Below, piece after piece: positions 1,559-46,976 of a stretch of DNA of 64,000 nucleotides. This DNA comes from Dendrobates tinctorius. Lineage: Eukaryota. The DNA lies in contig NW_027361709.1 in the NCBI RefSeq assembly GCF_039654945.1, positions 1,302,001-1,366,000 on the forward strand. Reading direction: 5' to 3'. Under the pieces are notes generated by a model. It made no database searches. It had not been told where the DNA came from and saw only the letters and a list, made by a program, of their open reading frames with translations. The translations under genes and the position numbers were made by a program. Numbering within the stretch: position 1 is the first letter of the stretch; each line of letters begins with the position of its first letter.

Positions 1559-1782
1559 ACTATTATTTTGGTGCTGCTTTTTTCTTTTTTTTTTTTTTGC
1601 TACACACACAGGTATATATACACACACTCCACCCCTGATATTATATATTCTCTTTATTTGCTTGTAATCTGACTTGATGATGATAATAATAGTGGTTGCT
1701 ACGGGAATCTGTTTACATACGGGCCATAGTGACGGCACTGTGCACAGCAGCCACGCAGGTGTTTGCTAAGCGCTAATCTGAT

Positions 1783-10520: not shown

Positions 10521-12116
<1,596 letters not shown>

Positions 12117-16329: not shown

Positions 16330-16531
16330 GGGGATCCCTGCGTGATTTGGGGTTGTCCCCCATAGTGACGCCCCCCCGGTACATAAAGCAGAACTCCGGC
16401 TCCCGGGGCCAGACACGGCCATTGCTCACTGGGATTTGCCCTGACTGATTCTGCAAGCGGCCGGATATTAGGAAACCCTGCAGCTTTTGATTCCTGAACC
16501 TCTGAGGCACGTCCGGGAGCGGCAGCACCAA
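16330..16531 (+). promoter_or_regulatory. Putative IRAK2 promoter and non-coding exon 1 (donor CAA|GTAAGT at 16532)
   Basis: GC/CpG-enriched stretch ~0.8 kb upstream of the first coding exon, whose 5' side has an acceptor (ctgcag ending 17294). Strong donor; imperfect kB-like site GGGATTTGCC at 16431-16440. Confidence 0.5.
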
Positions 16532-17317
16532 GTAAGTAACGAGACGCCGTGTGTAAAATCTGTAACGGGTGATTCTCATCCCTGGGGATCTGTGAGGACG
16601 CTCCATGGGCGACGTTCACACTCACGTTTGTTCTTCTATTCTTTCTATTACTTTTTATGGGATTTTGTGTTCATACCAGGAGCTCCTCTTCTTCTTCTTC
16701 TTTTTTGCTTCTTTTTTTTCCTGATGAGGTTTTGAAATAAATAAATGATTGTGCAAAATAAAAAAAAAAAGTGCTTATAACTTCTTGGAATCAGATCCTG
16801 ATGGAATCTGCTCCAAACTAGGCTGTCAAGAACGGATCAGGAGCGACCTGCACCTGTGAGCTCAGGATGTGTTCTGCCTCCCACGCACCATCTTCATGGT
16901 CTCTGCTCACTGACACTTCAGGGGAACATTCCTGTTTTTTTCTTTATAAAAGCTAAAAAAAAACTCCCTAAAGCTGAGAGTTTGTTCTCTCAGTCTGGAC
17001 TTGGATTGGGGGATTTAGACTGATACAATTGTAGCAAAACCTCAGCTGTGAGAAGTCTTAGGTCTGTTTTAGCCTTTCACAGTAATCAGGAATGTTCTCA
17101 ATCACTGACGGAAAAAAGCTTAAAAAAAAAAATCCATCCACAAAGTGTATTGGAACGTTCCGAAACTTTCCATCATGAAAGGATTAAACTTTATTACAAA
17201 AATGGAAATTCCCTTTAACACATTGATGCCCGGTGTCCGTCCTGTCAGTCTCGGAGTTGTGCGTAAATCATGACACTATTTATTATTTCTGCAGGTAACA
17301 CAGGAGAAAAGACAATT

Positions 17318-20300
17318 ATGGCGCAGTCACTGAATGGCGGGAGTTCATCCCCCCTGATCATTGACGTCCCACCCAGAGTTCTGGACGACTTCTGCCGCTG
17401 TGTTGACAGCTTGAATGACTGGGAATGGATGCGGTTTGGTAAGAAAGATTCATTCCCTGCTGTTACATATAACAACGGATATAATTCACATGTAATGTAT
17501 GGAGTGCACCAGCAGAATAGTGAGTGCAGCTCTGGAGTATAATACAGGATGTAACTCAGGATCAGTAATGTAATGTATGCACACAGTGACTGCACCAGCA
17601 GAATAGTGAGTGCAGCTCTTGAGTATAATACAGGATGTAACTCAGGATCAGTAATGTAATGTAATGTACGTACACAGTGACTGAACCAGCAGAATAGTGA
17701 GTGCAGCTCTGGGGTATAATACAGGATGTAACTCAGGATCAGTAATGTAATGTATGTACACAGTGACTGCACTAGCAGAATAGTGAGTGCAGCTCTGGGG
17801 TATGATACAGGATGTAACTCGGGATCAGTAATGTAATGTATGTACACAGTGGCTGCACCAGCAGAATAGCGAGTGCAGCTCTGGAGTATAATACAGGATG
17901 TAACTCAGGATCAGTAATGTAATGTATGTACACAGTGAGTGCACCAGCAGAATAGTGAGTGCAGCTCTGGGGTATAATACAGGATGTAACTCAGGATCAG
18001 TAATGTAATGTATGTACACAGTGACTGCACTAGCAGAATAGTGAGTGCAGCTCTGGGGTATGATACAGGATGTAACTTGGGATCAGTAATGTAATGTACA
18101 GTGGGGAAAAAAAGTATTTAGTCAGTCAGCAATAGTGCAAGTTCCACCACTTAAAAAGATGAGCGACGTCTGTAATTTACATCATAAGTAGACCTCAACT
18201 ATGGGAGACAAACTGAGAAAAAAAAATCCAGAAAATCACATTGTCTGTTTTTTTTTTCATTTTATTTGCATATTATGGTGGAAAATAAGTATTTGGTCAG
18301 AAACAAAATTTCATCTCAATACTTTGTGATATATCCTTTGTTGGCAATGACAGAGGTCAAACGTTTTCTGTAAGTCTTCACAAGGTTGCCACACACTGTT
18401 GTTGGTATGTTGGCCCATTCCTCCATGCAGATCTCCTCTAGAGCAGTGATGTTTTTGGCTTTTCGCTTGGCAACACCGACTTTCAAATCCCTCCAAAGGT
18501 TTTCTATAGGGTTGAGATCTGGAGACTGGCTAGGCCACTCCAGGACCTTGAAATGCTTCTTACGAAGCCACTCCTTCGTTGCCCTGGCGGTGTGCTTTGG
18601 ATCATTGTCATGTTGAAAGACCCAGCCATGTTTCATCTTCAATGCCCTTGCTGATGGAAGGAGGTTTGCACTCAAAATCTCACGATACATGGCCCCATTC
18701 ATTCTTTCATGTACCCGGATCAGTCGTCCTGGCCCCTTTGCAGAGAAACAGCCCCAAAGCATGATGTTTCCACCACCATGCTTTACAGTAGGTATGGTGT
18801 TTGATGGATGCAACTCAGTATTCTTTTTCCTCCAAACACGACAAGTTGTGTTTCTACCAAACAGTTCCAGTTTGGTTTCATCAGACCATAGGACATTCTC
18901 CCAAAACTCCTCTGGATCATCCAAATGCTCTCTAGCAAACTTCAGACGGGACCGGACATGTACAGGCTTAAGCAGTGGGACACGTCTGGCACTGCAGGAT
19001 CTGAGTCCATGGTGGCGTAGTGTGTTACTTATGGTAGGCCTTGTTACATTGGTCCCAGCTCTCTGCAGTTCATTCACTAGGTCCCCCCGCGTGGTTCTGG
19101 GATTTTTGCTCACCGTTCTTGTGATCATTCTGACCCCACGGGGTGGGATTTTGCGTGGAGCACCAGATCGAGGGAGATTATCAGTGGTCTTGTATGTCTT
19201 CCATTTTCTAATTATTGCTCCCACAGTTGATTTCTTCACTCCAAGCTGGTTGGCTATTGCAGATTCAGTCTTCCCAGCCTGGTGCAGGGCTACAATTTTG
19301 TTTCTGGTGTCCTTTGACAGCTCTTTGGTCTTCACCATAGTGGAGTTTGGAGTCAGACTGTTTGAGGGTGTGCACCGGTGTCTTTTTATACTGATAACAA
19401 GTTTAAACAGGTGCCATTACTACAGGTAATGAGTGGAGGAAAGAGGAGACTCTTAAAGAAGAAGTTACAGGTCTGTGAGAGCCAGAAATCTTGATTGCTT
19501 GTTTCTGACCAAATACTTATTTTACACCATAATATGCAAATAAAATGAAAAAAAAACAGACAATGTGATTTTCTGGATTTTTTTTTCTCAGTTTGTCTCC
19601 CATAGTTGAGGTCTACCTATGATGTAAATTACAGACGCCTCTCATCTTTTTAAGTGGTGGAACTTGCACTATTGCTGACTGACTAAATACTTTTTTTCCC
19701 CACTGTATGTTCACAGTGACTGCACTAGCAGAATAGTGAGTGCAGCTCTGGGGTATGATACAGGATGTAACTCGGGATCAGTAATGTAATGTATGTACAC
19801 AGTGGCTGCACCAGCAGAATAGCGAGTGCAGCTCTGGAGTATAATACAGGATGTAACTCAGGATCAGTAATGTAATGTATGTACACAGCGACTGCACCAG
19901 CAGAATAGTGAGTGCAGCTCTGGGGTATAGTACAGGATGTAACTCAGGATCAGTAATGTAATGTATGTACACAGTGACTGCACGCGCAGAATAGTGAGCT
20001 CAGCTCAGGAGTATAATACAGGATGTAACTCAGGATCAGTAATGTAATGTATGTACACAGTGAGTGCACCAGCAGAATAGTGAGTGCAGCTCTGGAGTAT
20101 AATACAGGATGTAACTCAGGATCAGTAATGTAATGTATGTACACAGTGACTGCACCAGCAGAATAGTGAGTGCAGCTCTGGAGTATAATACAGGATGTAA
20201 CTCAGGATCAGTAATGTAATGTAATAGGATGTAACTCAGGATCAGTAATGTAATGTAATGTATGTACACAGTGACTGCACCAGCAGAATAGTGAGTGCAG

Positions 20301-23300
20301 CTCTGGAGTATAATACAGGATGTAACTCAGGATCAGTAGAGAATGAGTAAGGTAATGTACCATATATGATAAAAGTGGGTATATGATGAGTATATTCTGC
20401 ATGCTCGAATAATATGTTGGAGTGTCCGCGCTTACATGTCTCACGGCCGCAGCACATGTGGGTGAGGAGAATCTGACATGTTATTCGAGCACCCGAGCAT
20501 GGTTTGATAAAACATTATCCGAGCACATTCTCTCGTCACTAGTGACCACACAAAATATAGACACTTTGGGCATAATTTGGCCATTTTCCTTTAGGGGTGT
20601 ACTTACTTTTGTTGCCAGTGGTGTAGACATTAATGGCTGTGATGAGGTATTCACACTGTTATACGAGCCGTACTCCGACCACTGTACATTAAAATATCTA
20701 CAGAATGTCAGGGGTGTACTAACTTTAGTGACCTTCTGTAATTGCACAGTGATTCTCGGGGCCGTCACAGATCTGATTGTCAGGCTCAGTGTCAGTCTCT
20801 GTGATGTTCCGGTGATAATTTGTGGTTTCCGTTGTGATTAATGAGCCGCTGATCTCAACATCAATGTGTAAATCTCATTCAGCTTTGATCATAGAGGAAG
20901 GGCGTCCTGACAGCGGCCCCTGCACTCCCTCCACTGTGGCCCCGCCGCGGCTTGTGGGGTGATCTGTTACAGGGGCTGCACCGTGGTGGCGGGACAAGCG
21001 GGGGCCGCATACTGCGAGCCCCTTAATACTAGTGACAGACACAGCGGAATATGGACATGTGACAAGTTCTGCAGATTTGTATCATCCTTCGTTTCAATGT
21101 GTCACCGTGCGTCAGAGCCTGGGAACCTGTAATGACCTATTCATCGCACAGCTGAGGGTTTGTTACAGTTGTGTCCAGTCCAGACAATCCTCTGTGAGAT
21201 AAATATCTTGGACTCCAGACTGATACATTGTAACAAAACAGGAGAGGCACTTGTGATGTGGAGGATGCAATTGTGACAAACCTTCAGCTGTGACAAGTTT
21301 TCAGTACAGAAGGAAAAATCTACTAATAAATTAAATAAAACTTATCCCTTGGTTATTGTGTAATATCCTACGTATTTATACCTCCATGTCCTCTGGCAGT
21401 GAATGGGAGAAGGTTTTTACCCTCTGTATAGACATAATTCCATTCATTGACAGCAAGCGGAGACCTGTAAAATGTCTATTTTTTATTTTTTCTTCTTCAG
21501 CATCACATGTTGTGAACGACCAGACAACCATCCAGCGTTTCTACATGAGGCGGCGGTGGGGCGACTGTGTGACCGGGGAGCTGCTCTGGAGCTGGGGGCA
21601 GAAGCTGGCCACCGTCCACGACCTGGAGCTCATCCTGCAGAAGCTGGAGCTCTACCGGGCGTTAGAAATTCTCCAGCAGTGTAAGAGTTACTCTCTGCTG
21701 TGTCCAGTGGCAGCGCAAAGCCCCCGGGGTGTCACCCAGACCTCCATTGCCCCCCGGGATGGCATATCAAGCACTGATACAAAAATGGTGTCAGGTAAAG
21801 ACTGCAGGACGGTATAACACGGGCTGTGAGGAGAGAAGACAGGGAGGGAATCACTGTGTCATCCTCTGTGTTCTAGAACCCAAAGTACCACCACTCCCAT
21901 CACCACCACAACCCCCATCAGAGCTGCTGAGGTCCCTGGGGACAGACTCCTATTCAGACCCGGTGTCCAGCACAGATCAGGTATGTGAGAAACTGGTATA
22001 ACCTGGGCATCTCCTGTACAGAATTATATATGTACAGCCGGTATAACCTGGGCATCTCCTGTATATAATTATATATGTACAGCCGGTATAACCTGGGCAT
22101 CTCCTGTATATAATTATATATGTACAGCCGGTATAACCTGGGCATCTCCTCTACAGAATTATATATGTACAGCCGGTATAATCTAGGTCTCTCCTGTGTA
22201 TACCTGTACATGTGCCTCCGGTATAACCTGGGCTTCACTTGTGTATACCTGTACATGTGCCTCCGGTATAACCTGGGCTTCACTTGTGTACACCTGTACA
22301 TGTGCCTCCGGTATAACCTGGGCTTCTCCGGGATGTGTCCCTGTATGTGGTGATGTGGACCATGTAGCTGTACAGTAACTCTCTCCTCCGCCCGGAAGGG
22401 ATTGAGTTCTCCACAGCAGGAGATCAGCCTGTCCCTGAACACCACGTGTCAGCCCTGGACGAGGCGGCAGCTGGAGGAAGCTACGGACGGGTTCAGTGTG
22501 AACAGGAGGCTACACAGCGGACCGTTTGCTGATGTCTTTGTAGGATGCAGGGGAGACAATGTTTATGCTGTGAAGAGGCTGAAGGAGGTAATGCGTCATT
22601 CCAGGGGTCTGCTCCGGGGGGCTTTATATCCCTGGCAGGTGTCGGGTTGTGACCAGGTCATGTCTGCACTTTCTTTAGGGGCAGTCGGACAGAACGAAAA
22701 TCTTCTATGAAAAAGAGGCTGAGATCGGTTTTCGGTAAGAGAGGACCCCTCTGTCCCACCGCTTTCTATATCTGAAGCTTCATCTTGGCGGAAGGAAGAG
22801 TTCTGCAACTTCTGAGACACTTTGTGCTGCAATATATTATTATTGTCGACATCTCTGCTGCCTGTCAGTGAATAGAATAACAAGTCATAGAGACACGTAT
22901 GACGGGGTGTGTGAGACGTTTAAAATGCTGCACACGGGCAGCTGTAGCGCTGACCAATGCTGAGGTGTGAATACGCGTCTATATGTGATGCCGCAGGGGT
23001 TGGGGAAACGTCCAGTTATCTGCGTAACAGCAATTCACTTCTTTGGGGGATACAGACCAGAGTACCAGGGTCCGCTGAGCGGTCTCTATAGCCGTGGCGT
23101 CTCTGGCCGCCTCATAGAGCCAGGCATCCAGTATTCAATATCTCATTAATATTGCTCACAGCTGAGGGTTTGTTACAGTTGTATCCAGCCTGGACAGTCC
23201 TCTGAGCTGAGCAGCCTGTTCTCCAGATTGATACATTGTAACAAATTGTCGGGAGAGAGATTTGTGCTGCTGATGGGTTTATCTCACAGATGATTGTCCA

Positions 23301-26300
23301 GAATGGATGCAATTGTAACAAACCCTCAGCTGTGCAAAGTTAATTTACCCCATTAGTGTAATTGTGAGCGCTGCAGCTTTTCTGTCTCGTGTCTTGTACA
23401 GATGTCATCATCCCAATCTCCTGAAGTTGCTCGGCTTCTGTGTGGAGAGCGGACAGCACTGTCTCATCTACCGTCTCATGAATGAGGGATCTCTGGATGT
23501 CGCCTTACAGAAAGTGAGTCTCCTCAAGGAAGAAGTAACCCTCTTCTCCTCTATGGACGCTTAAAGACTTACTTTTCTATAGGTGACATGTAACAGGTAT
23601 ATAGGTACATACATAAATACATATACATTCATATACCCCACATCTACGTCAGGCGGATGTGATCAGAGCACAGTCCACCTCTCCTGTAGCCGATGGTTAT
23701 ACCATAGGTCAGTGATGGCGAACCTTTCTGAGACCGAGTGCCCAAACTGCAACCTAAAACCCAATTATTTGTGTCGAAGTGCCAACACGTGCCAAATGCC
23801 CCGTCATGATCCCCTTCATGCAGAAATGTCTCATCCTGATCCCTTTCCTGTAGAAATTGCCCATTCCACCACCTCCATCATTGCCCTCTCCCCATCACTC
23901 CCATCATTAGCCCTCTCCCCATCACTGGCCCTCTTCACACACACACTCACACACTTACCTCTCCATGCGCCTGCAGCTTCCTTCCTCTCACTTCCTCTCA
24001 CACATTGAGCGGCGCGGCTGGATGACATCATCATGCAGCTACGCTTCCTCGCCGCTCAATATGTGTGAGGAAGCTGCAACTCCGAACATTGAGGCGAGGC
24101 CGCGTGCCATCACTGCCATTGGTGATGGCAGCTCTGCCAGTGTCTGTGCAATCCCTGCATCTTTCATCTGTGCTCTTCCCCCAGTCCATGGAGTTACTGC
24201 CCGCTTCCTAGACTTTCCATTACAGGGTCATGTCCTTTTTCCTAAATTCTCAACATCTGGAGGCCTGGAAATATCTAAACTAGAATGTTTTCCATATAAA
24301 TACATGTTCCATTGTTTCACTCTTCACTACTAATATAAAAACTTTCATCATATACGTGTTATATTTTCATACATTATACTGTTATATCATGTATTATACT
24401 CCAGAGCTGCACTCACTATTCTGCTGGTGCAGTCACTGTGTACATACATTACATTACTGATCCTGAGTTACATCCTGTATTATACTCCAGAGCTGCACTC
24501 ACTATTCTGCTGGTGCAGTCACTGTGTACATACATTACATTACTGATCCTGAGTTACATCCTGTATTATACCCCAGAGCTGCACTCACTATTCTGCTGGT
24601 GCAGTCACTGTGTACATACATTACTGATCCTGAGTTACATCCTGTATTATACTCCAGAGCTGCACTCACTATTCTGCTGGTGCAGTCACTGTGTACATAC
24701 ATTACTGATCCCGAGTTACATCCTGTATTATACCCCAGAGCTGCACTCACTATTCTGCTGGTGCAGTCACTGTGTACATACATTACATTACTGATCCTGA
24801 GTCACATCCTGTATTATACTCCAGAGCCGCATTCACTATTCTGCTGGTGCAGTCACTGTGTACATACATTACTGATCCCGAGTTACATCCTGTATTATAC
24901 CCCAGAGCTGCACTCACTATTCTGCTGGTGCAGTCACTGTGTATATACATTACATTACTGATCCTGAGTCACATCCTGTATTATACCCCAGAGCTGCACT
25001 CACTATTCTGCTGATGCAGTCACTGTGTACATATATTACATTACTGATCCTGAGTTACATCCTGTATTATACTCCAGAGCTGCACTCACTATTCTGCTGA
25101 TGCAGTCACTGTGTACATATATTACATTACTGATCCTGAGTTACATCCTGTATTATACTCCAGAGCTGCACTCACTATTCTGCTGGTGCAGTCACTGTGT
25201 ACATACATTACTGATCCCGAGTTACATCCTGTATTATACCCCAGAGCTGCACTCACTATTCTGCTGGTGCAGTCACTGTGTATATACATTACATTACTGA
25301 TCCTGAGTCACATCCTGTATTATACCCCAGAGCTGCACTCACTATTCTGCTGATGCAGTCACTGTGTACATATATTACATTACTGATCCTGAGTTACATC
25401 CTGTATTATACCCCAGAGCTGCACTCACTATTCTGCTGGTGCAGTCACTGTGTACATACATTACATTACTGATCCTGAGTTACATCCTGTATTATACTCC
25501 AGAGCTGCACTCACTATTCTGCTGGTGCAGTCACTGTGTACATATATTACATTACTGATCCTGAGTTACATCCTGTATTATACTCCAGAGCTGCACTCAC
25601 TATTCTGCTGGTGCAGTCACTGTGTACATACATTACTGATCCTGAGTTACATCCTGTATTATTCTCCAGAGCTGCACTCACTATTGTACTGAGAATCTTC
25701 TGTGTATTTTTCAGGCTGGATCTGTCCTGGGCTGGGAGCGGCGGCTGGCTGTCACTGTAGGTCTGTTACATGGTGTCGGTCACTTGCATAGTGCTGGGAT
25801 TTTTCATGGAAACATTAAGAGGTGAGACATTTGGGGGAAATACATTGAGCCCTTTAAGACATAATTGCTCAAAAATGTTGCAACTTTTGGAGTTGTTTTC
25901 GAGTTCCAACAACCTAATATAACACACATACACTGGTGCCGGTGTTGTTCTTTCCCCGCCATGCGGGCGGTGGTCTCTGTATTAGGTCAGCGGACTTTGG
26001 CCGCCGGTGCCGCTCCGTCTTCTCACTTTACCTGCAGGATATCGCCGTGCTCACATCCGCCGCTGATGGTGGAGGTTTCCACATTTTCACTTCTTACATC
26101 CTGCGCCTCCATTATTGCTTCCTCATTTATGGTTCCTTTATGATTAACCCTTTCATGGTCAGTGTTATTGGAATCATGAGGGAAATCCCTGTACATATCA
26201 GACCACACCATTTCCCAAACTGCAAAATTCCCAAGCCCCCTCCAATTAGCATAGTCCGAGATTTCCATGCCTTTAAGACTGTGTTCACATGAGCCGTACT

Positions 26301-29300
26301 GCAGGTGTCTCCGGTGTCCCACACACTCCTATAACAATGGGGTCCTCCATGATTTTCGGCTTTGTGTTCGCCCCTATTTTTCCCACCATATTTTATGATA
26401 TAACATTAAGTGAGTGGTGATGGCCAACTCACTGAATGAATGTAAGAAAGGAATGGAGGCTTTTCTTGTGAGTAATAGTATAGAAGGTTATGAATAACAG
26501 AATATTATAGGTAGATGGGTGACCCAGCTTAGGGGAAGGAATTTTTTTCCCTATGGAGAAAATTGGCTTCTACTCTGTGGGTTTTTTGCCTTCCCCGGGA
26601 TCAACAATGCAGAACAGCTGCACTAAAAATAGGCGGAACTAGATGGACATAAGGTCTTCCTTCAGCCTTCAAAACTATGTTACTATGTAACATATTCCAA
26701 CAGTTTATTAGTGGGGTCTGATCTCTGGAACCCCCAGAAAATAATGCTGGTGGCGCTGATTGAGTGCAGCACCTTCTTGATGTTTCCTTTGTAAATGAAT
26801 GGGACCGACTCCAAATTCCACCGGTGACTATGACGCCGCTGCGCCCAATAAGCTTTTAAACAGAATTGATGTACTGCAGCTCCTACGTTCCCGGGCGCTG
26901 CCACCACTAACTCTGTAAACTGCTGGGAGTTGTAGTTCCACTAATGAGGAGGGGTCATCTGCTGTGCGCTGATACATTCCTAGTTAACCCCTTGTTCTCT
27001 ACATTAGTTCTAACGTCTTCCTGGATGAGGATTTCACTGCGCGCTTAGGCCACGCTGGGACGCGATTCTCTCCTGATCGATCGGCAAATTACACTAATGT
27101 GAAGACCCAGGAGCTGCAAAGGTTCCAGCCTTACCTGCCCGACATCTACCTGCGGTGCGGTCAGCTCACCGCACAGACGGACATCTTCTCCTGCGGTATA
27201 GTAAGTGCCGATGCTATCAGAAGCGGCCCCTGCTTTATGGCACAGGGGTCCTCCAGTGGGTGGCGGAAGAAGTGAGGGAATAAAAAGTCCTGCAGCCTTC
27301 CAATGTGCCTGGGGGCAGAGACTGGAGTCCAAAAAAAGGAAAAGTAGTAGTAGATCCAACATTTCAATAAAATATAAAACTTGTTTTCATTTTGTTACAC
27401 CATATCTCAAAAATGGCGCAATCATCAGAGGAAACATCCCAGAGAAGAATACGATCAAGGTTGATGCATTTGGAAGTAAAATCTCTTTACTCCTAACCTA
27501 TGATACAATGAGATCTTGGGGGTTTAAGGATCTGACAAGTGACTGCACCTCTACAGTCACACATGATGACCGGCCTCATTAATAAGAAACAATCCTCGTT
27601 ATCCAAAAGACAGAACAATCCATCATTACAGAATCATTAGACCCTCCTAGTGTCTTATTCTGCATCCTGACTCGTGAAGGAGATGAAATCCGTCCATTTA
27701 TTAAAACCCTGAGGAGACAAAGTATTTAGCCTGGTATCCAGAAGGTAAGAACCCCCCTCAATGTTTTCCCCTCTGACTGAACAATTAACCTTTCGACACA
27801 TTAAACAAACTGAATTTTATCTGATCATCTTTGTGTTCTGTAAGAAACTGTCTGGAAGCATTGTCAGGGTAATGGCCTCAGGGTTACTGAGCCTCTTCAT
27901 TGATTCTTTGGTGCCGATATTTTACATCACACCAAGCACTGGATACAATGCACCAAAACTCACAGCTACAGTGGATGAATTGTTTAATTGAATGTTTTTT
28001 CTATGTGATGAAGTGATCCCATTCCATTGTTTGTGTAATGTATTTACAAGATTTGCATTCCTCAATGATGAGGAAGGTGTGAGGTCGACTCTTTTATTAT
28101 GCGATTCTCCTGAGAAACAAGAGTCCTGAAAGGATTAGGAATTATTTATTTTAGAACTGACAACAATTCCCTAACATTCCCTAACATTTGCTTATACACC
28201 ATAGGGAAATATTTAGTAATGAATAAGACTCTTGTAACTATGATAAAAAAGGAAAGAACATTAATTTAATCACATGAGATAAAGCAGCTAATGAAACAAT
28301 TCATCAACTGTAGCAGCAAGATCTGGTGTATTGTATCCAGTGCTTGGAGTAATGTGAAGAATATCGGCTGCACCACTGTAAATTGAGACAATCAATACTT
28401 GAGGGTTTTTTACCCAAGTTCAGTGGCTCCGGTGGGGCTTACATCTGGACCCCTGCAAAACGGGATTTGGACATATGCACCAACTATAACGGTGCAGACA
28501 GAGTCCACGTGCGCTCTGACGGGAGGCCGACTCCCATCGAAGTAGACTATGGTTATAGTTTTGACTGGATGAAAATAAAAAGTTTTATACATTTTATTAA
28601 CGTGTTGGATCAAGTGCTATTTCCGGTTTGCTTTTGTTGTGGAGTTTGGATCTTTGAACGCTGGATAGGTGAGCCGATTACACCACTTTCTGCAGAGTCC
28701 AAAAAATCAAGTGTATGGGATAGAATAATGCCAAATATTATTATTATTATTTATTGTTATAGCGCCATTTATTCCATGGCGCTTTACATGTAAGGAGGAG
28801 TATACATAAAAACAAGTACAATAATCTTAAACAATACAAGTCATAACTGGTACAGGAGGAGAGAGGACCCTGCCCGCGAAGGCTCACAATCTTCAAGGGA
28901 TGGGTGATAATACAGTAGGCGAGGGTAGAGCTGGTCATGCAGCGGTTTGGTGGATCGGTGGATACTGCAGGTTGTAGGCTTGTCGGAAGAGGTCGGTCTT
29001 CAGGCTCTTTTTGAAGGTTTCGATGGTAGGTGAGAGTCTGATATGTTGTGGTAGAGAGTTCCAGAGTAGGGGGGATGCGCGAGAGAAATCTTGTATGCGA
29101 TTGTGGGAAGAGGAGATGAGAGGGGAGTAGAGAAGGAGATCTTGTGAGGATCGGAGGTTGCGTGCGGGAAAGTACCGGGAGACGAGGTCACAGATGTATG
29201 GAGGAGACAGGTTGTGGATGGCTTTGTATGTCATGGTTAGGGTTTTGTAATGGAGTCTCTGGGCAATTGGGAGCCAGTGAAGGGATTGACAGAGGGGAGA

Positions 29301-32169
29301 AGCTGGGGAATAGTGGGGGGACAGGTGGATTAGTCGGGCAGCAGAGTTTAGAATAGATTGGAGGGGTGCGAGAGTGTTTGAGGGGAGGCCACAGAGCATG
29401 AGGTTGCAGTAGTCAAGGCGAGAGATGAGGGCATGGACTAGGGTTTTTGCAGATTCTTGGGTGAGGAATGAACGGATTCGTGAAATATTTTTGAGTTGAA
29501 GTCGGCAGGAAGTGGAAAGGGCTTGAATATGTGGTTTGAAGGAGAGATCAGCGTCGAGGATTACTCCGAGGCAGCGAGCTTGTGGGACTGGGGAGAGTGG
29601 GCAGTCATTTACTGTAATTGATAGGTTTGTAGGGGGGGTCACGTGAGATGGGGGAAAGATGATGAATTCTGTTTTGTCCATGTTGAGTTTCAGAAATCTA
29701 GCGGAGAAGAAGGATGAAATAGTGGACAGACATTGAGGGATTCTGGTTAGTAGGGAGGTGATATCTGGTCCAGAGATGTAGATCTGTGTGTCACCAGCAT
29801 AAAGATGATACTGAAAGCCATGAGATTCTATGAGCTGTCCCAGGCCAAAGGTGTAAATAGAGAACAGCAGGGGCCCAAGGACTGAACCTTGTGGGACTCC
29901 TACAGATAGGGGGCGAGGTGAGGAGGTGGTGTGTGAGTGGGAGACGCTGAATGTCCGGTCTGTTATGTATGATGAGATCCAGGATAGGGCCAAGTCTGTG
30001 ATGCCGAGGGATGAGAGGGTCTGTAATAATAGGGAATGGTCCACTGTGTCAAAGGCAGCCGACAGGTCCAGGAGGAGGAGGACAGAGTAGTGTCGCTTGC
30101 TCTTGGCGGTTAAGAGGTCATTGGTGACCTTATTAAGGGCAGTTTCAGTGGAGTGGTGTGACCGGAAGCCAGATTGTAAGCGGTCGAAGAGGGAGCAAGA
30201 AGAGAGATGGGAGGACAGTTCAAGGTAGACGTGCTGTTCCAGGAGCTTGGAGGCGTAGGGGAGAAGTGATATAGGGCGATAGCTAGATACAGAGGATGGG
30301 TCAAGAGAGGGCTTTTTGAGGATAGGTGTGATGGAGGCATGTTTAAAGCTTGAGGGGAAAACACCAGTTGTTAGTGATAGGTTGAAGAGATGGGTTAGGG
30401 TTGGGATGAAGACTGTGGTGAGGTTTGGTATGAAGTGGGACGGGATTGGGTCGAGTGCACAGGTGGTGAGATGTGATCTTGAGAGTAGAATATAATATAA
30501 TAAAAGGGAGAGTGATGGACGGTCCTAAAGTCATGACATAAAATCTGCTGTGAGACGACGTCCACTAATCAGGAATTTTTTATTTAATACAATGTGTTTT
30601 ATGATTTTTTTTTCTTTTAGGTTTTAGCAGAACTCCTGACCGGACTGAAGCCCACCGACAAGGACCGAGACCCTTCGTATCTGGTACGAACAGCCACACA
30701 CAGTTTTGCATTAATTCTGTCCTTATGGAGCCATCTAATAACTCGCCCTCTGTCACCTCCAGAAAGATCTTATCCTGATGGAAGTGGAGCGGGTGAAATT
30801 AAAAGCGGAGTCCAATAGTCCTGGATCGGAGTCTGTGGACCTGCTCTGCGCAAAAGAAATCAGCCAAAAATACACGGATAGAAGACTTGAGCGTTTGGGA
30901 AGAAGTTCTGCGACACATTGGGCTTCTGCCATCTGCCTGTGTCTGAACAAGAAGAGAACTTTATTATCAGAGGTAACGTTATAATAGTATCCTGTACATT
31001 ATAGTGTGTTACTCCGTCTCAGGTTCTGTTTGTGAAGATCTGGTGGTGCAGGGAGTGCTGCGAAAAAATATACAAATTAGCTTCCCTCCAGAAGGAAGAC
31101 ATTTGTCTCTATAGCATAGGTAAAGTTAACTGTGCCTATTGATTTTTCATTAGAGGTTTTTATCTGCTATAGAGCCATCTGTCTACCTGCTTGCTGACTG
31201 TTTCCAATACCACTATACAATTTACTTTTTTATTCCCTAGATCATCTTTAACCTTTATATTTTCTTCTATTCCACAATAGGTTATAACATTGATGGAGAA
31301 GGCTCAGGAGACATTCACGGCCTGTGCGAAGGAAGCACAGGAGGACGAGATGTCCAGTGTGAATGTTCCCGAGGAGCGTGATGAGTCCTTGTCTATAGGT
31401 TACACCCATGGAGAAGCGGTGGAGCTGCCCAACTGTTCCCCCAAAGCTGTTGCCTCCTTGAGCAGCAAATCCATGCCGCCATATCGCCCAGCACAAAATG
31501 ATGTGTTCAAGAGGAGCCCGTGTGAACTGGACGAGTCTGGAAGCTTCGACTTGTATCCTGATGACAGTTGGTCCCGGAGTGAGCCGTCGTCTGCACCGAC
31601 CACAACGTCGTCTGCGGGACATCAGGACAAATCGTGGACCCCAGAAAGGAGCATACCCCAAAAATTGGCAAACTCACCAACAGGTAAACTGAAAGTATGT
31701 AAGTATGTTATCCTCTTCCACCATCTGTACAGGGGGCACAATGCAGTCAGGGGGTAGTGTCCTCCTGGAGTCACCAAGCCCAGACTCCTCCATCAGGCGC
31801 AGATAGAGAAGTGCGATCCGTCACTGCACAGAACACGTCTCCTCCAGAGTCCATTGGTGGCAGCTTTACACCAATCTCCGTCCAACGCACTGCATTGTGC
31901 TTGGTGATACATGGCTGCATGCAGCTGCTCAGCCATTGAAACCCATGCGATGAAGCACCAGCAGACTGTGTATAACAAGTCTCCATGACGTTCGCCATAT
32001 TTTATAGCATGTGTGTCACTGATCTTTCTTATTTTCTTCTCATTTACTAGAAAGCAATGAACCATCGTAAGGAATTGAAGTGAATGAAGCCAAGCTGAAG
32101 ATGATGGAGGAGATCGGAGTGTACGAAGACGAGAAGGTGGACAGCTACAGTCTTTTTCATTCAGCCTGA
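17318..32169 (+). CDS. IRAK2: Interleukin-1 receptor-associated kinase 2 (death domain, pseudokinase, C-terminal TRAF6-binding region)
   Basis: Coding exons 17318-17438, 21501-21794, 21877-21980, 22399-22587, 22679-22734, 23402-23513, 25715-25821, 27008-27200, 30621-30683, 30763-30972, 31281-31683, 32051(or 32072)-32169; all GT-AG and phase-consistent. Death domain ([21 protein letters not shown]...[12 protein letters not shown]...LELYRA), AVK lysine, Tyr gatekeeper (LIYRLM), HGNIKS for HRD, GHA for DFG, PxExxD/E motifs PEERDE and PCELDE, tail IEVNEAK...EKVDS. Synteny with TATDN2. Last exon has an in-frame TAA at 32068-32070. Confidence 0.95.
18099..19705 (-). mobile_element. Full-length Tc1 transposon, 1607 bp, intact transposase
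   Basis: TA duplication at 18097-98 and 19706-07; ~206-bp TIRs (cagtggggaaaaaaagtatttagtcag...ggtcagaaacaa) with only about five differences. Confidence 0.98.
18316..19338 (-). CDS. Tc1 transposase, 340 aa, DD34E
   Basis: Uninterrupted [13 protein letters not shown]...ITKY; paired-like HTH region, GAPRK linker, WSDETK / HDNDPKH / 34 residues / NPIENLW. Confidence 0.96.
20575..20740. mobile_element. Tc1-like terminal remnant
   Basis: Two copies of aggggtgtact(t/a)acttt ending in ...ctg-TA, typical of an IR/DR Tc1 terminus. Confidence 0.45.
21147..21293. mobile_element. Short palindromic MITE-like element (related copies at 23157-23335, ~16970-17050, ~15850-15900)
   Basis: Inverted ends cacagctgagggtttgttaca...tgtgacaaaccttcagctgtg. 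Confidence 0.6.
21995..22330. repeat. 45-bp minisatellite (~7-8 copies), IRAK2 intron
   Basis: Unit ccggtataacctgggcatctcctgtatataattatatatgtacag, with a variant gradient along the array. Confidence 0.9.
24391..25685 (+). repeat. 86/81-bp tandem array (~15 copies), IRAK2 intron
   Basis: Same unit as 4430-6583; ends ~30 nt before the acceptor at 25714. Confidence 0.96.
27910..28376. mobile_element. MITE-like element with ~80-bp imperfect terminal inverted repeats
   Basis: 27910-27990 (ggtgccgatatt..ccaagcactggatacaat..gctacagtggatgaattgttt) is the reverse complement of ~28292-28376. Confidence 0.65.
28736..30489 (-). mobile_element. 5'-truncated L2-clade LINE (RT domain and 3' tail)
   Basis: ORF 28935-30044 with [22 protein letters not shown] (YADD mutated), LNMDKTE, LHWLP; frameshifted upstream RT segments. 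The 3' end reads gtaaagcgccatggaataaatggcgctataacaataaa(taa)n. Confidence 0.93.
31770..32010. mobile_element. Old Tc1/mariner-derived fragment in the last IRAK2 intron
   Basis: Resembles by recall a common fish/amphibian Tc1 relic (ctccagagtcca..gctttacacca..gcattgtgcttggtga..gcagctgctc..gaaacccat). Confidence 0.4.
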
Positions 32170-34006
32170 GTTCACTATGTATTACACCAGCGATGGCCAT
32201 TATAGGACTGAGCATACACCATTAACACTACTACCTTCTGGGTACCGACTTCATATGCCTCTGCAGAGACTACCTCAAAGTCTGCTATGTTCTGGCCCAC
32301 CAGAGTGGGGTACTTGTCCTACCCACATCGCCCAAGGATAATAAAGCATCATGGCCCCTTGTGTGATTATGATTGGGAGGAAGAAACCTGAGCAAATTTA
32401 AAGGAGTTTAATAAAATGAGAAAACATGTCCGCTTCCTTCCAGATACAGCGCCACCCTTGTGTTTAGGCCTAGTATGAAACTGTACCTTAATTTCAACCT
32501 CTTCTATGGAAAGAGAGTTTCTAAAAGAGGGAGGGCGGCCGTGTTTTTTTAATCCCAAAGGCCTCATTCATGTGTAAGTACATCCCATGGATGAGAAGAA
32601 CCAATTATTTTGATCAGATGCGGGGCTGAGTGTCATTAGATTTTCTCTTTTGTGGAGAAAAAAAAGTTTCTCCACCTTCTCCTTTCTGACAATCCGTGAA
32701 CATCAGACAGCATTCAGATGTCATCCAAGTGATGTCTGATTGTTTTTTTAATGGTCTCATATTGCTCCGACCCTCTTTGTCATAGATGTAATGGAAAAGA
32801 ACCCATAAACTGTGTCTTGGTGGACGTGTCACCCTCATATTATTGACGGAAGCAAGGCTTCCTCATGACTTGATGGAAACAAGAGCTAGCACTCAAAAAA
32901 CACTCCAATATTCGGCTAGGACCTCCGCTGTGGGATTATCTGATGAATGGCAGACATTGTGTATACAAGAGGCGGAGGGGTGACACTTTACATTTTCCGG
33001 TTTTCCAAAGGAATTATATCAGACACGCTGACGCTGAAGTCCAGTTATGAATATTTCTTTTCTTTATGATATTTGTATATTCTATAGTTATGGGAGACAT
33101 ACATTTGGTGTTGTGATAAAATGTTGAATGTAACGTATTTACCTACATCACTGGACGGTCTGCACATCAGTCACAAGTTAATATTGGACAGATGCAAAAC
33201 AATTTACATTCCTTGTTTCCTATCTATGGAAAGCTGACATCATGATAGGAAATATGGCAGTAATATCTCCTGCCTGGGACCACCAGGGGTGAAGATATCC
33301 TAAAAATTGTGGGTCACATAATTTTTTGGGACCCTAGCCACATCCCATAGACCAGCCCCTATAGGAGCCCACCAATGGGAGGCATGTGGGCGGGACTTTT
33401 ACCTGATAAATACAGACTGTGAATGGCAGTCACTGTCAGTCTTGGAGGATAGAGTTCCCTGTAGATCTTTACCATTTTCAGACGAAAACTTCCCGCCATA
33501 AAGACCAGAGCCGTTCCTGAGACCACAGGTCAGTACTTACCTTCTGTTATCTCTTGGTATTTCATGTGATTGTATATACCGCACTGTTTGTCCCCTTTGT
33601 GACATCTTTTGTGTGCTGATGGCAATTTTGGTAGCTTACAAGCAATGAAAGGTCTTGTCGTTCCGTGTTACTGCCTCATTTTTTTCCCCTTAATTTGTAA
33701 CGTTTTTTAATGATTGTAATTATTATTGAATTTACATAATGTTTGTAATTATCGGTTTTATACATTGTGTAAAATAAAGAGAAATGTGTAGTCCATGGTA
33801 TCATCCATGTCACCTCAGAGCCATAGGGGGAGTGTATGGGAACCAATTATAGGGGTTGTCTAGTCATCCCGCGGAGCGATCGCTAAGGGCACCAATTCTG
33901 TGCACCATACAAGGCAGGAACATATCCGAAACTTCACACATTTCATAGACATTTATGGAACAATGGTCCAAGTCACTCTGTGGTAAACGCTTGTTTATTC
34001 TCCTTA

Positions 34007-35680: not shown

Positions 35681-36143
35681 CATACAGCACACCGGTCATC
35701 AGTGTCTGCGGGGGTGCGGGTGTCAGACCCCTGACCTCATACAGTACACCGGTCATCAGTGTCTGCGGGGGTGCGGGTGTCAGACCCCTGACCTCATACA
35801 GTACACCAGTCATCAGTGTCTGCGGGGGTGCGGGTGTCAGACCCCCGCCCTCATACAGTACACCAGTCATCAGTGTCTGCGGGGGTGCGGGTGTCAGACC
35901 CCCGACCTCATACAGTACACCGGTCATCAGTGTCTGCGGGGGTGCGGGTGTCAGACCCCCGACCTCATACATTACACCAGTCATCAGTGTCTGCGGGGGT
36001 GCGGGTGTCAGACCCCCGACCTCATACAGTACACCAGTCATCAGTGTCTGCGGGGGTGCGGGTGTCAGACCCCCGACCTCATACATTACACCAGTCATCA
36101 GTGTCTGCGGGGGTGCGGGTGTCAGACCCCTGACCTCATACAG
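35681..36143. repeat. 57-bp minisatellite (~8 copies), TATDN2 intron 1
   Basis: Same family as 1783-3367. Confidence 0.95.
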
Positions 36144-36352
36144 TTATTGTCTCTCGCACATTTATAGGCGCAGGATGAATTTTTGGTGTTTATGTTGTAA
36201 CATTTTGGCATCTTGTAGAGATTCTGACATCTTGGCGCCCCCTCCCTCCCCCCTCGCTGCTCCCCCTCAGGATGTCCAATGCTGAATGTCATCTTTACAC
36301 TTGTGACTAATAATTATTTTTTTTATTTTTTTTTTTAGCTTTTAAAGTCACC

Positions 36353-39300
36353 ATGGCAGACAGGAGCGTGAGCGGCTCACGAAAGCATAGATGGCAGAGT
36401 CCACCCGAGATGTCTCCTCGCAAATATCGGAAGAGCAGCGAATCACGTACAGTCAGTCACAGCCGAGAGCGCGATGCCAAGAGTCGCAGCCGAGAGCGCG
36501 ATGCTGAGAGTCACAGCTCGTCCCGGGAGCAGCAGGTGATCATCTCTCCCCTGCAGAGTACGCCCAGACGACGGCTGGATATCGTCACCGGGGTCCGCTC
36601 CACTGTGAGAGCCCTGAGTAGACAAACGGACGGAGTGCAATCCCACAGAAATGCCACCCACATAGAGACATCAGAGACGGCGCCAGAGAAAGAGGTAACT
36701 CAGTAGCAATATTCAGGGGAAACCATTACACTCACCAGGGTCGTACATAGAAGTCATGGGGCCCCATAGCAGAAGTATAATGCACAGCCCATAGTCCTCC
36801 ATGTAGTGTAATGCACAGCCCATAGTCCTCCATGTAGTGTAATGCACAGCCCATAGTCCTCCATGTAGTGTAATGCACAGCTCATAGTCCTCCATGTAGT
36901 GTAATGCACAGCTCATAGTCCTCCATGTAGTGTAATGCACAGCCCATAGTCCTCTATGTAGTGTAATGCACAGCCCATAGTCCTCTATGTAGTGTAATGC
37001 ACAGCCCATAGTCCTCTATGTAGTGTAATGCACAGCTCATAGTCCTCCATGTAGTGTAATGCACAGCCCATAGTCCTCTATGTAGTGTAATGCACAGCCC
37101 ATAGTCCTCTATGTAGTGTAATGCACAGCCCATAGTCCTCTATGTAGTGTAATGCACAGCCCATAGTCCTCTATGTAGTGTAATGCACAGCCCATAGTCC
37201 TCTATGTAGTGTAATGCACAGCCCATAGTCCTCTATGTAGTGTAATGCACAGCCCATAGTCCTCTATGTAGTGTAATGCACAGCCCATAGTCCTCTATGT
37301 AGTGTAATGCACAGCCCATAGTCCTCTATGTAGTGTAATGCACAGCCCATAGTCCTCTATGTAGTGTAATGCACAGCCCATAGTCCTCCATGTAGTGTAA
37401 TGCACAACTCATGGTCATCCATGTAGTGTAATGCACAACTCATGGTCATCCATGTAGTGTAATGCACAACTCATGGTAAATCCATGTAGTGTAATGCACA
37501 ACTCATGGTAAATCCATGTAGTGTAATGCACAACTCATGGTCATCCATGTAGTGTAATGCACAACTCATGGTCATCCATGTAGTGTAATGCACAACTCAT
37601 GGTCATCCATGTAGTGTAATGCACAACTCATGGTCATCCATGTAGTGTAATGCACAACTCATGGTCATCCATGTAGTGTAATGCACAACTCATGGTCATC
37701 CATGTAGTGTAATGCACAACTCATGGTCATCCATGTAGTGTAATGCACAACTCATGGTCATCCATGTAGTGTAATGCACAACTCATGGTCATCCATGTAG
37801 TGTAATGCACAACTCATGGTCATCCATGTAGTGTAATGCACAACTCATGGTCATGCATGTAGTATAATGCACAGCCCATGGTCATGCATGTAGTATAATG
37901 CACAGCCCATAGTCCTCCATGTAGTGTAATGCTCAACCCATAGTCCTCCATGTAGTGTAATGCACAACCCATAGTCCTCCATGTAGTGTAATGCACAACC
38001 CATAGTCCTCCATGTAGTGTAATGCCCAGCCCATAGTCTTCCATGTAGTATAATGCACAACCCATAGTCCTCCATGTAGTATAATGCGCAGCCCATGGTC
38101 ATCCATGTATTATAATGCACAGCCCATAGTCATCCATGTAGTATAATGCACAACCTATAGTCATCCATACACCCAGCTTAAGTATTTGCTGTATTCGGGG
38201 GGGCCCCTCACCCACCGGGCCCTGTTCAGAGTGATGGTTCATACAAACTTATTATGCTCCATTCACTTGCAGGACTTTAGACCCCTTATTGTCTGGAATG
38301 CAGGATGTCTATGCAGCTGGACCCCCATCTATTTTTACATTTATACTCTGTGTAATTTTCTCTTGTGCCCACAAACAACTAATATTCCACATTTTCTCTC
38401 CAGCGCGATCATCCGGAGCAGAGAAATAATGACTCTAATAGGAGATCGAGTAATGAAGCGATGAGACTGCAAAGCTCGAAAATCAAAGTGCCTTCTCTCC
38501 TATTCAAGAGGGCATTCAGTGACATCCTGGGGACGTCCTGTGCACCCCGGAGATCGCGGGACAGCGAGACCAGGAGTTCAAATGAAAGAAAACCAGTGGA
38601 AAAAAGTAGTAGCTCTGATCCCGAGGAGTCACCTCCGCTACGCTCAACCCCAAAATCCACCGTCTCCAAGAAGGAAGTTGTGGGAGACCGGAAACGGAGC
38701 AGCGACGACAGAAAGAGAGCGCCCAGCCCGAGACACTCGGTCATCAATGTGATTACCAGACCTGAAGCCAAAGTTCCGCAGGAAAACCCCCGACTTGTGT
38801 TCTTAAATGAAGACAGCGATAATGATGTAAGTAGAACAGGAAGGCCTTAAAGGGGTTGTCCAGGAATGTGATCTTGATGGCTTGCACGTAGGAGAGGTCA
38901 TCGGTATCGGATCGGTGGTGGTCTGATGCTCGGAACCTCCACAGTCCGCTGTTTGTAGCTCCGGTGACGGCTTGATGTGCAAAGTGTACGGGCCCAAAGA
39001 TCGGTACACTGTGTAGTGTCACATTCTGGTGCTGCAGCTCCCAGTGAAGTGAATGGGATCCGACCTGTGGTACATGGAAGTGACCACTACACGGTGTACG
39101 ATGCTGCACATTGTGTCCTTCCCTCCTGGTGGAGCACAGAGCTGATCTGTGAGGTTTCGTGTGCCGGACACCCACCAGATTATTCAGATTGTGGAAACGC
39201 TGATCCCATCGATTAACCCTTTCACTGCTGCTGTCACAGCTAATGGAGGCTTTGTGCAGGGAGCAGTGATCACAGGCCTGGGACCAGACCAAGGCCGTCA

Positions 39301-46810: not shown

Positions 46811-46856
46811 ATGGAATAAATGGCGCTATAACAATAAATAATAATAATAATAATAA
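46811..46856 (+). mobile_element. Ultra-short L2 3'-tail insertion with target-site duplication
   Basis: atggaataaatggcgctataacaataaa(taa)n is identical to the 3' end of the LINE at 28736-28779 and is flanked by taactcc on both sides. Confidence 0.85.
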
Positions 46857-46976
46857 TAACTCCGGATCAGTAATGTAATGTAAGTACACAGTGACTGCAC
46901 CAGCAGAATAGTGAGTGCAGCTCTGGAGTATAACACAGGATGTAACTCAGGATCAGTAATGTACTGTATGTACACA

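What the first reader, a model, noticed from the sequence alone, without database searches (positions are those of the whole stretch)
32051..32169. In-frame TAA in the last IRAK2 exon that also forms a rescuing splice acceptor
Seen: with the strong acceptor (polypyrimidine tract + CTAG ending 32050) the exon reads E-S-N-E-P-S-TAA(32068-70)[35 protein letters not shown]. The 32 codons after the stop are open and match the IRAK2 tail I recall from human (ETSWQIEINEAKRKLMENILLYKEEKVDS); the stop sits at the Trp position. The same bases make TAAG|GA, an AG 21 nt downstream in the correct phase, which would skip the stop and keep the tail. Inference: a recent truncating change (623 aa), a splice switch between tail-less and tail-containing (649 aa) isoforms, readthrough, or an assembly error. 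A stop in the last exon should escape NMD, and both TRAF6 motifs lie upstream.
Basis: partly seen in the sequence, partly recalled or inferred. Interest (0 to 1): 0.7.

Follow-up and report, generated by a model that had tools for sequence, protein, structure and literature searches.

The report
Tail-less IRAK2 duplicate in poison frog
The stop codon is real. It sits in one of two side-by-side copies of the immune-signalling gene IRAK2 in the dyeing poison frog; that copy is transcribed and normally spliced, so it should make a protein lacking an ancient 33-residue tail, and no splice rescue was seen.

Summary
Observation confirmed. With the canonical acceptor (exon start 32051) the frame reads ESNEPS-TAA (32068-70). 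It is followed by 32 open codons and the old TGA (32167-69). The TAA replaces a Trp that is nearly invariant across 42 tetrapod IRAK2 proteins.

The window is Dendrobates tinctorius, which carries two tandem IRAK2 genes:
- Copy A (657 aa, next to VHL, just upstream of the window) keeps TGG and the tail.
- Copy B (this window, RefSeq model 623 aa) has TAA. It also has a 254-nt deletion that removes most of exon 3.

RNA contigs from three D. tinctorius studies and one related species show only the junction 31683>32051. One 833-nt contig matches copy B exactly across the TAA, so it is not an assembly error. No 31683>32072 junction was found and no 649-aa isoform is annotated. That AG has a poor pyrimidine tract (7/20 against 17/20).

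Copy B's pre-stop coding sequence still looks constrained (7 synonymous, 6 non-synonymous changes on its lineage). In one run it is expressed about as strongly as copy A.

Verdict: a real, fairly recent truncation of one duplicate. The splice-rescue, readthrough and assembly-error readings are not supported. Interest is modest.

The parts
17318..32070 (+). Coding span of IRAK2 copy B (12 coding blocks, 623 aa, equals XP_073431044.1)
   Evidence: Exact mapping of P0013 onto the window. L005, the locus of P0013, matched the window at 100% over the 1301 bases compared. Death and kinase domains were found by Pfam.
21681..21794 (+). Scar of a 254-nt deletion. It comprises 92 nt of former intron 2 (21681-21772) fused to the last 22 nt of exon 3 (21773-21794). 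The gene model reads it through in frame, which replaces the ProST-linker residues at about 101-133.
   Evidence: Alignment with copy A and Phyllobates, sequence and protein comparison. Whether transcripts read through or skip the scar was not tested.
31281..31683 (+). Penultimate exon (C-terminal domain with both TRAF6-type motifs). Donor GT at 31684-85.
   Evidence: RNA contigs cover it in all four runs.
31684..32050 (+). Last intron. It has a branch-point-like CTGAT at 32019-23 and a pyrimidine tract (17/20) before the AG at 32049-50. It also holds a dispersed repeat at about 31700-31960.
   Evidence: Joint 31683>32051 (GT..AG) in X6, X8, X10 and X17. Splice-signal count.
32051..32070 (+). 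Coding part of the last exon, ending in the derived stop TAA (32068-70) at the conserved Trp codon
   Evidence: The X6 RNA contig is identical over 32049-32388.
32061..32070 (+). Cluster of five differences between copies B and A within 10 nt. Four are G>A changes derived in copy B (32061, 32064, 32069, 32070).
   Evidence: Permutation P about 0.004 for five differences within 10 nt.
32070..32071 (+). AG created by the TGG>TAA change. It is a potential in-frame acceptor (exon start 32072), and no use of it was detected.
   Evidence: No such joint. Pyrimidines 7/20 upstream. No 649-aa isoform in the cluster.
32071..32169 (+). Relic of the conserved IRAK2 tail (32 codons plus the ancestral TGA at 32167-69). 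It now lies in the 3' UTR.
   Evidence: In copy A the equivalent residues 631-644 and 650-654 are predicted helices, with block-mean pLDDT about 81-82 over residues 631-650.
32358..32777 (+). Insertion of about 420 nt in the 3' UTR of copy B. It is absent from copy A and from the related species' transcript.
   Evidence: Homology jumps from L006 22663 to window 32357/32775. An X8 contig joins 32357 to 32778, and the X17 alignment ends at 32357.

Best explanation
The window carries the downstream member (copy B) of a recent tandem duplication of IRAK2 in Dendrobates tinctorius. In copy B the conserved Trp codon in the last exon changed from TGG to TAA, as part of a cluster of G>A changes. The last intron is still removed at the ancestral acceptor, so the mRNA carries the stop 18 nt into the last exon. 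The mRNA should therefore escape nonsense-mediated decay, and it is present at about the level of copy A in one run. It should be translated into a 623-aa IRAK2 with a death domain, a pseudokinase domain and both TRAF6-type motifs. That protein lacks the 33-residue C-terminal helical tail conserved across tetrapods. The AG created by the mutation is not detectably used. Copy A (657 aa) keeps the full protein, so the loss is buffered.

Shown: the stop, its derived state, the duplication in the assembly, canonical splicing, and expression of both forms.

Inferred: NMD escape, translation, and that copy B still works as a tail-less signalling or regulatory variant rather than being dead. I put that last point at about 50%.
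For: - TAA, reading frame and relic tail.
- Twelve other frog IRAK2 proteins read [15 protein letters not shown]....
- Tail conserved in frogs, salamander, turtle, bird, gecko, monotreme, marsupials and placentals.
- Two D. tinctorius proteins on one 7.8-Mb HiFi contig, XP_073431043.1 (657 aa) and XP_073431044.1 (623 aa), 93% identical. Copy A lies next to VHL.
- The duplicated block runs at 95-98% identity and includes about 3 kb upstream of the start codon. The TATDN2 5' fragment is repeated.
- Copy A has TGG where copy B has TAA.
- The junction 31683>32051 is the only one seen, in 3 D. tinctorius studies and 1 related species. The X6 contig has 0 differences over 32049-32388. In X8 the two forms have depths 25.6 and 23.5.
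- The contig break at 32070|32071 and the apparent SNPs in X8 and X10 match copy A's letters exactly.
- Canonical acceptor: first AG after CTGAT, 17/20 pyrimidines.
- B-lineage changes in the pre-stop CDS are 7 synonymous and 6 non-synonymous, against 77% non-synonymous expected if neutral (P=0.016).
- The assembly is hifiasm on HiFi reads longer than 10 kb with haplotig purging: PMC11152451.
Against: - All RNA evidence is from assembled contigs, which drop rare isoforms. A minor 32072 isoform cannot be excluded.
- Read laying hides differences within 30 nt of a piece end. The TAA is therefore read directly only in X6 (zero-difference count) and is inferred in X8 and X10 from graph breaks.
- The duplication rests on one assembly. 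I could not check DNA depth.
- X6 shows only the B-type form, and X10 shows mosaic A/B haplotypes. These would also fit two alleles of one locus, or gene conversion.
- The selection test has 13 changes. It weakens to P of about 0.06 if transition bias is allowed for (my rough estimate, not computed). It also averages over the time before the stop arose.
- No protein evidence exists.
Confidence: 0.8

Rival explanations
1. Copy B is an early unprocessed pseudogene. The stop and the exon-3 deletion are neutral decay in a redundant duplicate. Its transcription is only left over from a duplicated promoter, and the protein is useless or unstable.
For: - There are two independent lesions in copy B and none in copy A.
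- Behind the stop, the B lineage has 2 non-synonymous changes at otherwise conserved tail positions (L>V at 32119, I>S at 32150) and 1 synonymous change. Copy A has 0 non-synonymous and 2 synonymous.
- The S>R change in the first TRAF6-type motif is B-specific.
Against: - Both lesions leave the frame intact upstream of the stop.
- Pre-stop non-synonymous to synonymous counts are 6:7, below neutral expectation and no worse than copy A at 10:6.
- Expression roughly equals copy A in X8.
- The tail counts are far too small to test (Fisher P=0.4).
Confidence: 0.4
2. The TAAG acts as a rescuing acceptor, so copy B makes both a tail-less (623 aa) and a tail-containing (649 aa) isoform by choosing between 32051 and 32072.
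For: The AG at 32070-71 is in phase and 21 nt downstream. Contigs can miss rare isoforms (tool caveat).
Against: - No 31683>32072 joint appears in any of four runs, although joints with sides as short as 21 nt are listed.
- The graph break in X8 and X10 falls at 32070|32071. That is what copy A's TGG predicts. An alternative junction predicts 32069|32070.
- The upstream 20 nt hold 7/20 pyrimidines, and two AGs lie closer to the branch point.
- RefSeq predicts no such isoform.
Confidence: 0.05
3. A and B are two very divergent haplotypes of a single IRAK2 locus that the assembler laid in tandem. The TAA is then a segregating nonsense allele: heterozygous in the reference animal, X8 and X10, and homozygous in X6.
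For: - A:B is about 1:1 in X8.
- Only the B type is seen in X6.
- X10 has mosaic haplotypes: 32115C-32118A-32119C sit in one 31-mer, so they are truly linked.
Against: - Both copies lie inside one hifiasm HiFi contig built from reads over 10 kb with haplotig purging.
- The junction (TATDN2 5' fragment, a 2.1-kb satellite, then the IRAK2 upstream region) is continuous sequence.
- Divergence is 4.5% over about 20 kb with many large indels.
- RefSeq annotates two genes.
Confidence: 0.1
4. The stop is read through (or recoded), so the full tail is still made from the canonical transcript.
For: The frame after the stop is still open for 32 codons.
Against: - The open frame is expected anyway for a young lesion: synonymous divergence between copies A and B is 0.044.
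- TAA followed by G is among the least leaky contexts (general knowledge).
- No readthrough-promoting motif or Rfam element is present.
Confidence: 0.03

Closest known systems
Vertebrate IRAK2 (for example Phyllobates terribilis XP_073501121.1, 657 aa; D. tinctorius copy A XP_073431043.1)
   Same: Death domain, Asn-for-Asp pseudokinase domain (FHGNIKSSN), two PxExx-acidic TRAF6 motifs, exon structure, and the VHL-IRAK2-TATDN2-GHRL neighbourhood. Copy B is 93% identical to copy A.
   Different: Copy B ends 33 residues early, at the Trp that opens the conserved C-terminal helices. Its ProST linker is replaced by former intron sequence.
Mouse Irak2 splice isoforms (Irak2c/d, inhibitory) and IRAK-M/IRAK3 as family members that damp signalling
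   Same: They are natural IRAK variants that keep part of the architecture and change signalling output. This is a possible model for what a tail-less paralog could do. Sources: the title and abstract of PMC2715079 name Irak2c; the rest is from my knowledge of Hardy and O'Neill 2004.
   Different: The mouse isoforms arise by alternative splicing or promoter use at the N-terminal death-domain end of one gene. Here a nonsense codon in a duplicated gene removes the C-terminal tail. No inhibitory activity has been shown.
Tandem (NAGNAG-type or distant) alternative acceptors and nonsense-associated altered splicing
   Same: A mutation creates both a stop and a new in-frame AG downstream of the normal acceptor.
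   Different: No transcript using the new AG was found. It lacks a pyrimidine tract and lies 21 nt behind the first AG.
Young tandem duplicates in which one copy acquires a terminal truncation (early pseudogenisation or subfunctionalisation)
   Same: Synonymous divergence between the copies is 0.044, about one fifth of the distance to Phyllobates (0.23). One copy is intact, and the other has lesions but is still expressed.
   Different: Nothing essential. This is the class it belongs to.

Membership tests
IRAK2 | N-terminal death domain | tested here: met
   PF00531 at residues 23-100 of P0013, E=5.7e-10, above the cut-off.
IRAK2 | Protein-kinase fold with the catalytic Asp replaced (pseudokinase-type HGN) | tested here: met
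   PF00069 and PF07714 at residues 206-448. The sequence reads IFHGNIKSSN in both copies.
IRAK2 | C-terminal domain with two TRAF6-binding motifs PxExx(acidic/aromatic) | tested here: met
   PEERDE and PCELDE lie in the penultimate exon, upstream of the stop. The first motif carries a B-specific S>R at the +1 position. Binding itself was not tested.
IRAK2 | Conserved C-terminal tail SWxIE[VI]NxxKxKLMExIxLYxxxK[LV][DN]SxxLF | tested here: not met
   It is cut off by the TAA at 32068-70 in the spliced mRNA and survives only as an untranslated relic. It is present in copy A and in the other full-length frog IRAK2 proteins aligned, 12 in all, and in 16 tetrapod sequences.
IRAK2 | Orthology: best matches are IRAK2, and the gene lies between VHL and TATDN2/GHRL | tested here: met
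All named hits are IRAK-like 2.
Alternative 3' splice-site rescue | Transcripts joining 31683 to 32072 | tested here: not met
   Only 31683>32051 was seen in four runs. The evidence is at contig level, so rare use is not excluded.
Alternative 3' splice-site rescue | Usable acceptor signals (pyrimidine tract, first AG after the branch point) | tested here: not met
   7/20 pyrimidines against 17/20 for the canonical site. The AGs at 32049 and 32053 come first.
Unprocessed pseudogene | Neutral evolution (dN/dS about 1) and loss of expression | tested here: inconclusive
   B-lineage counts are 7 synonymous to 6 non-synonymous (P=0.016 against neutral), and copy B is expressed. The counts are small and include the time before the stop arose.

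The most novel reading that the evidence does not exclude
After a Dendrobates-specific tandem duplication of IRAK2, one copy was kept by selection as a hard-wired tail-less, linker-altered variant. It would still enter the Myddosome and hold the TRAF6 motifs but signal differently, for example as a damper or a sustained-signal form. This would be a gene-level counterpart of the regulatory IRAK isoforms of mammals, and it would show what the conserved IRAK2 tail is for.
Probability: 0.3. Interest if true: 0.6.

Novelty: new member of a known kind. Interest (0 to 1): 0.3.

Why it matters
IRAK2 is a central adaptor of Toll-like and IL-1 receptor signalling. Its last roughly 33 residues are conserved from frogs to mammals. 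My paper searches found no function described for them. They are predicted to form confident helices in an otherwise disordered C-terminal domain.

The frog carries an intact copy and an expressed tail-less copy side by side. That pairing gives a natural experiment for asking what the tail does. It is also a small example of how immune genes diversify after duplication.

For genome annotation, the 623-aa model is correct and is not an error to be repaired. The finding itself, a truncated young duplicate, is otherwise an ordinary evolutionary outcome.

Tried and rejected
- **Word search with the 134-aa penultimate exon.** It found only one genomic fragment of another frog (P0001; loci L001 and L002), which stops in the intron. 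It was no use for the stop codon.
- **Exhaustive representative search.** It gave three hits. Its value was P0002, which opened the way to the frog orthologs.
- **Third word search, P0017:278-657.** It was meant to catch transcript-derived fragments of other Dendrobates species and found none. The codon in the related species (organism B) therefore stays unknown. Read laying hides differences within 30 nt of a joint. X17 has 5 hidden differences in the two end zones, which fits either TGG or TAA.
- **Early idea of a polymorphic stop codon.** I inferred it from contig breaks at 32070|32071 in X8 and X10. It was rejected once copy A's letters (31651A, 31673T, 32061G...32070G) explained the whole bubble.
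- **Early idea that S>Y and D>H in the relic tail show post-stop decay.** Rejected: copy A shares both changes.
- **P0007 (Ranitomeya).** Its DNA could not be fetched.
- **Template for the clustered changes.** None in the window: the 18-mer occurs once.
- **Rfam scan of 31000-33500.** Nothing found.
- **Pfam.** It has no model for the tail.
- **Paper searches.** They turned up nothing on the function of the IRAK2 tail.
- **Operator rules.** The N run at 1265-1393 was left untouched.
Full report
**What is in the sequence.** The penultimate coding exon is open from 31281 to 31682. It ends with a G at 31683, followed by a GTAAAC donor. A pyrimidine-rich tract plus CTAG ends at 32050. From there the frame reads G|AA AGC AAT GAA CCA TCG TAA (32068-70). 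Thirty-two open codons follow ([32 protein letters not shown]), then TGA at 32167-69. The AG at 32070-71 is 21 nt downstream of the normal acceptor and in phase.

**Identity of the genome and gene.**
- I confirmed this. The locus that encodes NCBI protein XP_073431044.1 ([quoted passage not shown], 623 aa, P0013) matched the window at 100% over the 1301 bases compared.
- P0013 maps exactly onto twelve coding blocks between 17318 and 32067, ending ...NSPTESNEPS.
- It has a death domain and a kinase domain above Pfam's cut-offs, and the HGN pseudokinase signature.
- Two PxExx-acidic motifs (PEERDE, PCELDE) lie upstream of the stop.

**The stop replaces a conserved Trp, and the tail is ancient.**
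- The other frog IRAK2 proteins with an intact C-terminus (12 of 13 in the alignment) read [39 protein letters not shown] or close variants. They include the dendrobatoids Phyllobates terribilis, Ranitomeya imitator and Anomaloglossus baeobatrachus.
- The motif SWxIE[VI]NxxKxKLMExIxLYxxxK[LV][DN]SxxLF recurs in salamander, turtle, bird, gecko, platypus, marsupials and placentals. The Trp itself is replaced in the salamander and gecko sequences.
- An AlphaFold2 model of the full-length frog protein leaves residues 509-626 disordered (pLDDT about 30). It predicts helices at 631-644 and 650-654, with block-mean pLDDT about 81-82 over residues 631-650.
- Pfam has no model for this tail, and my paper searches found no study of its function.

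**The key context: two IRAK2 genes.**
- The 90% cluster of P0013 holds a second D. tinctorius protein, XP_073431043.1 (657 aa, P0017), on the same 7.8-Mb contig. Its gene lies directly after VHL, about 30 kb upstream of the window's gene.
- The proteins are 93% identical.
- The DNA is 95-98% identical over a block of about 20 kb that includes about 3 kb upstream of the start codon (L006 about 6772-24186 against window about 14255-34303).
- Copy A reads GAG CCG TCA TGG GGA where copy B reads GAA CCA TCG TAA GGA. Copy A keeps the tail ([33 protein letters not shown]).
- With Phyllobates and Anomaloglossus as outgroups, the G>A changes at 32061, 32064, 32069 and 32070 are derived in copy B.
- Five differences within 10 nt are more clustered than chance (permutation P about 0.004). 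No template for a local conversion exists in the window.
- The assembly was made with hifiasm from HiFi reads over 10 kb with haplotig purging (PMC11152451). A false tandem duplication inside a contig is therefore unlikely, but I could not check DNA depth.

**Transcripts.**
- I laid contigs of three D. tinctorius runs from three studies (X6, X8, X10) and one run of a related species about 5% divergent (X17) on 31000-32800.
- The only junction across the last intron, in all four runs, is 31683>32051 (GT..AG). No 31683>32072 joint is listed, although joints with sides as short as 21 nt are reported.
- An 833-nt contig of X6 matches the window with 0 differences over 32049-32388. That stretch includes the TAA, all copy-B-specific letters and the start of a B-specific 3' UTR insertion. 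The stop is therefore in mature copy-B mRNA of an independent sample and is not an assembly error.
- In X8 and X10 the contigs fork from 31651 to 32070 and rejoin at 32071. I first read this as a possible polymorphism in the stop codon.
- The fork coincides exactly with the letters that distinguish copy A: 31651A, 31673T, 32061G, 32064G, 32067A, 32069G, 32070G. An alternative 32072 junction would have placed the break one base earlier.
- Both paralogs are therefore expressed, and both use the ancestral acceptor. Their depths are 25.6 against 23.5 in X8 and 2.8 against 4.14 in X10. This fits a stop in the last exon escaping nonsense-mediated decay.
- RefSeq predicts no 649-aa isoform.
- The canonical AG is the first one after a branch-point-like CTGAT at 32019 and follows 17/20 pyrimidines. 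The AG at 32070-71 follows 7/20, with another AG (32053-54) in between.
- Contigs cannot exclude a rare isoform.

**Is copy B decaying?**
- It has a second lesion. A 254-nt deletion fuses 92 nt of intron 2 to the last 22 nt of exon 3 (junction 21772|21773).
- The gene model reads through this in frame, replacing about 33 residues of the poorly conserved ProST linker. Skipping from the intact old donor at 21681 would also keep the frame. I could not test which form occurs.
- Over the pre-stop coding sequence, excluding exon 3, copies A and B give dS 0.044, dN 0.0146 and omega 0.33. D. tinctorius against Phyllobates gives dS 0.23. The duplication is therefore about one fifth as old as that split.
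- Parsimony assigns 7 synonymous and 6 non-synonymous changes to copy B, and 6 and 10 to copy A. For copy B this is below the neutral expectation of 77% non-synonymous (P=0.016). By my rough estimate, not computed, it would be about 0.06 with transition bias.
- Behind the stop, copy B gained 2 non-synonymous changes (L>V, I>S, at positions conserved in other frogs) and 1 synonymous change. Copy A gained 0 and 2. This suggests release from constraint but is not significant.
- The S>Y and D>H replacements, which at first looked like decay, are shared with copy A.

**Open points.**
- X6 shows only a B-type transcript, and X10 carries mosaic haplotypes. For example, 32115C-32118A-32119C are linked within one 31-mer. 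Gene conversion, population variation, or (less likely) allelism of A and B could explain this.
- The related species' transcript shares none of 7 clear copy-A-derived states and 3 of 10 copy-B-derived states. Copies A and B share 3-5 derived states against it. The duplication is therefore about as old as that species split.
- Whether that species has the stop could not be read. The tool hides differences within 30 nt of a joint, and 5 hidden differences fit either codon.

**Verdict.** The splice-rescue headline, readthrough and assembly error are not supported. The truncation lies in one of two young tandem copies, with the intact copy beside it. That makes it a fairly ordinary post-duplication event that RefSeq already models as a 623-aa protein. 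What remains mildly interesting is that the tail-less, linker-altered copy is well expressed and still looks constrained. That makes it a natural handle on the unexplained conserved tail of IRAK2.

Noticed in passing
window 21681-21794: Copy B lost most of exon 3 and the 3' part of intron 2 through a 254-nt deletion. The annotated protein reads former intron sequence in frame, which changes the linker residues at about 101-133. The old donor at 21681 is intact, so exon skipping would also stay in frame.
   Followed up: partly
window 32061-32070: Five differences between copies A and B lie within 10 nt around the stop. Four are G>A changes derived in copy B, a cluster unlikely by chance (P about 0.004). 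It looks like a single multi-nucleotide mutation event. No template sequence exists in the window.
   Followed up: partly
window 32358-32777: An insertion of about 420 nt in copy B's 3' UTR is absent from copy A and from the related species' transcript. Part of it (about 32647-32770) is a dispersed repeat with very high RNA contig depth.
   Followed up: no
window 31700-31960: The last intron holds a dispersed repeat. Many divergent RNA contigs from all four runs pile up there, with depth up to about 1200 in the related species.
   Followed up: no
window 4431-6587, 17502-18103, 19704-20223, 24381-25685, 45933-49509: Arrays of a tandem satellite of about 86 nt occur in both orientations. One array sits exactly at the junction between the two duplication units, others lie in IRAK2 introns, and another lies near ghrelin. 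They give the runs of 91-aa ORFs in the ORF list.
   Followed up: partly
window 1782-3367 against 35681-36144: A 57-nt tandem repeat in the TATDN2 5' region is much expanded in the orphan upstream duplicate. The adjoining 3645-4328 matches 36143-36837 at only 86%, which is lower than the IRAK2 part of the duplication.
   Followed up: no
window 6956-14255: About 7.3 kb upstream of copy B has no counterpart upstream of copy A. It is probably an insertion after the duplication.
   Followed up: no
P0003 (Hyperolius riggenbachi isoform X2) and P0016 (Rhinoderma darwinii isoform X2): RefSeq predicts IRAK2 isoforms in other frogs that end before the conserved tail. Tail-less IRAK2 may therefore also arise by alternative 3' ends elsewhere.
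   Followed up: no
window 1265-1393: A run of 129 N lies inside the orphan TATDN2 fragment. The published assembly is contig-level HiFi, so this may be masking rather than a gap.
   Followed up: no
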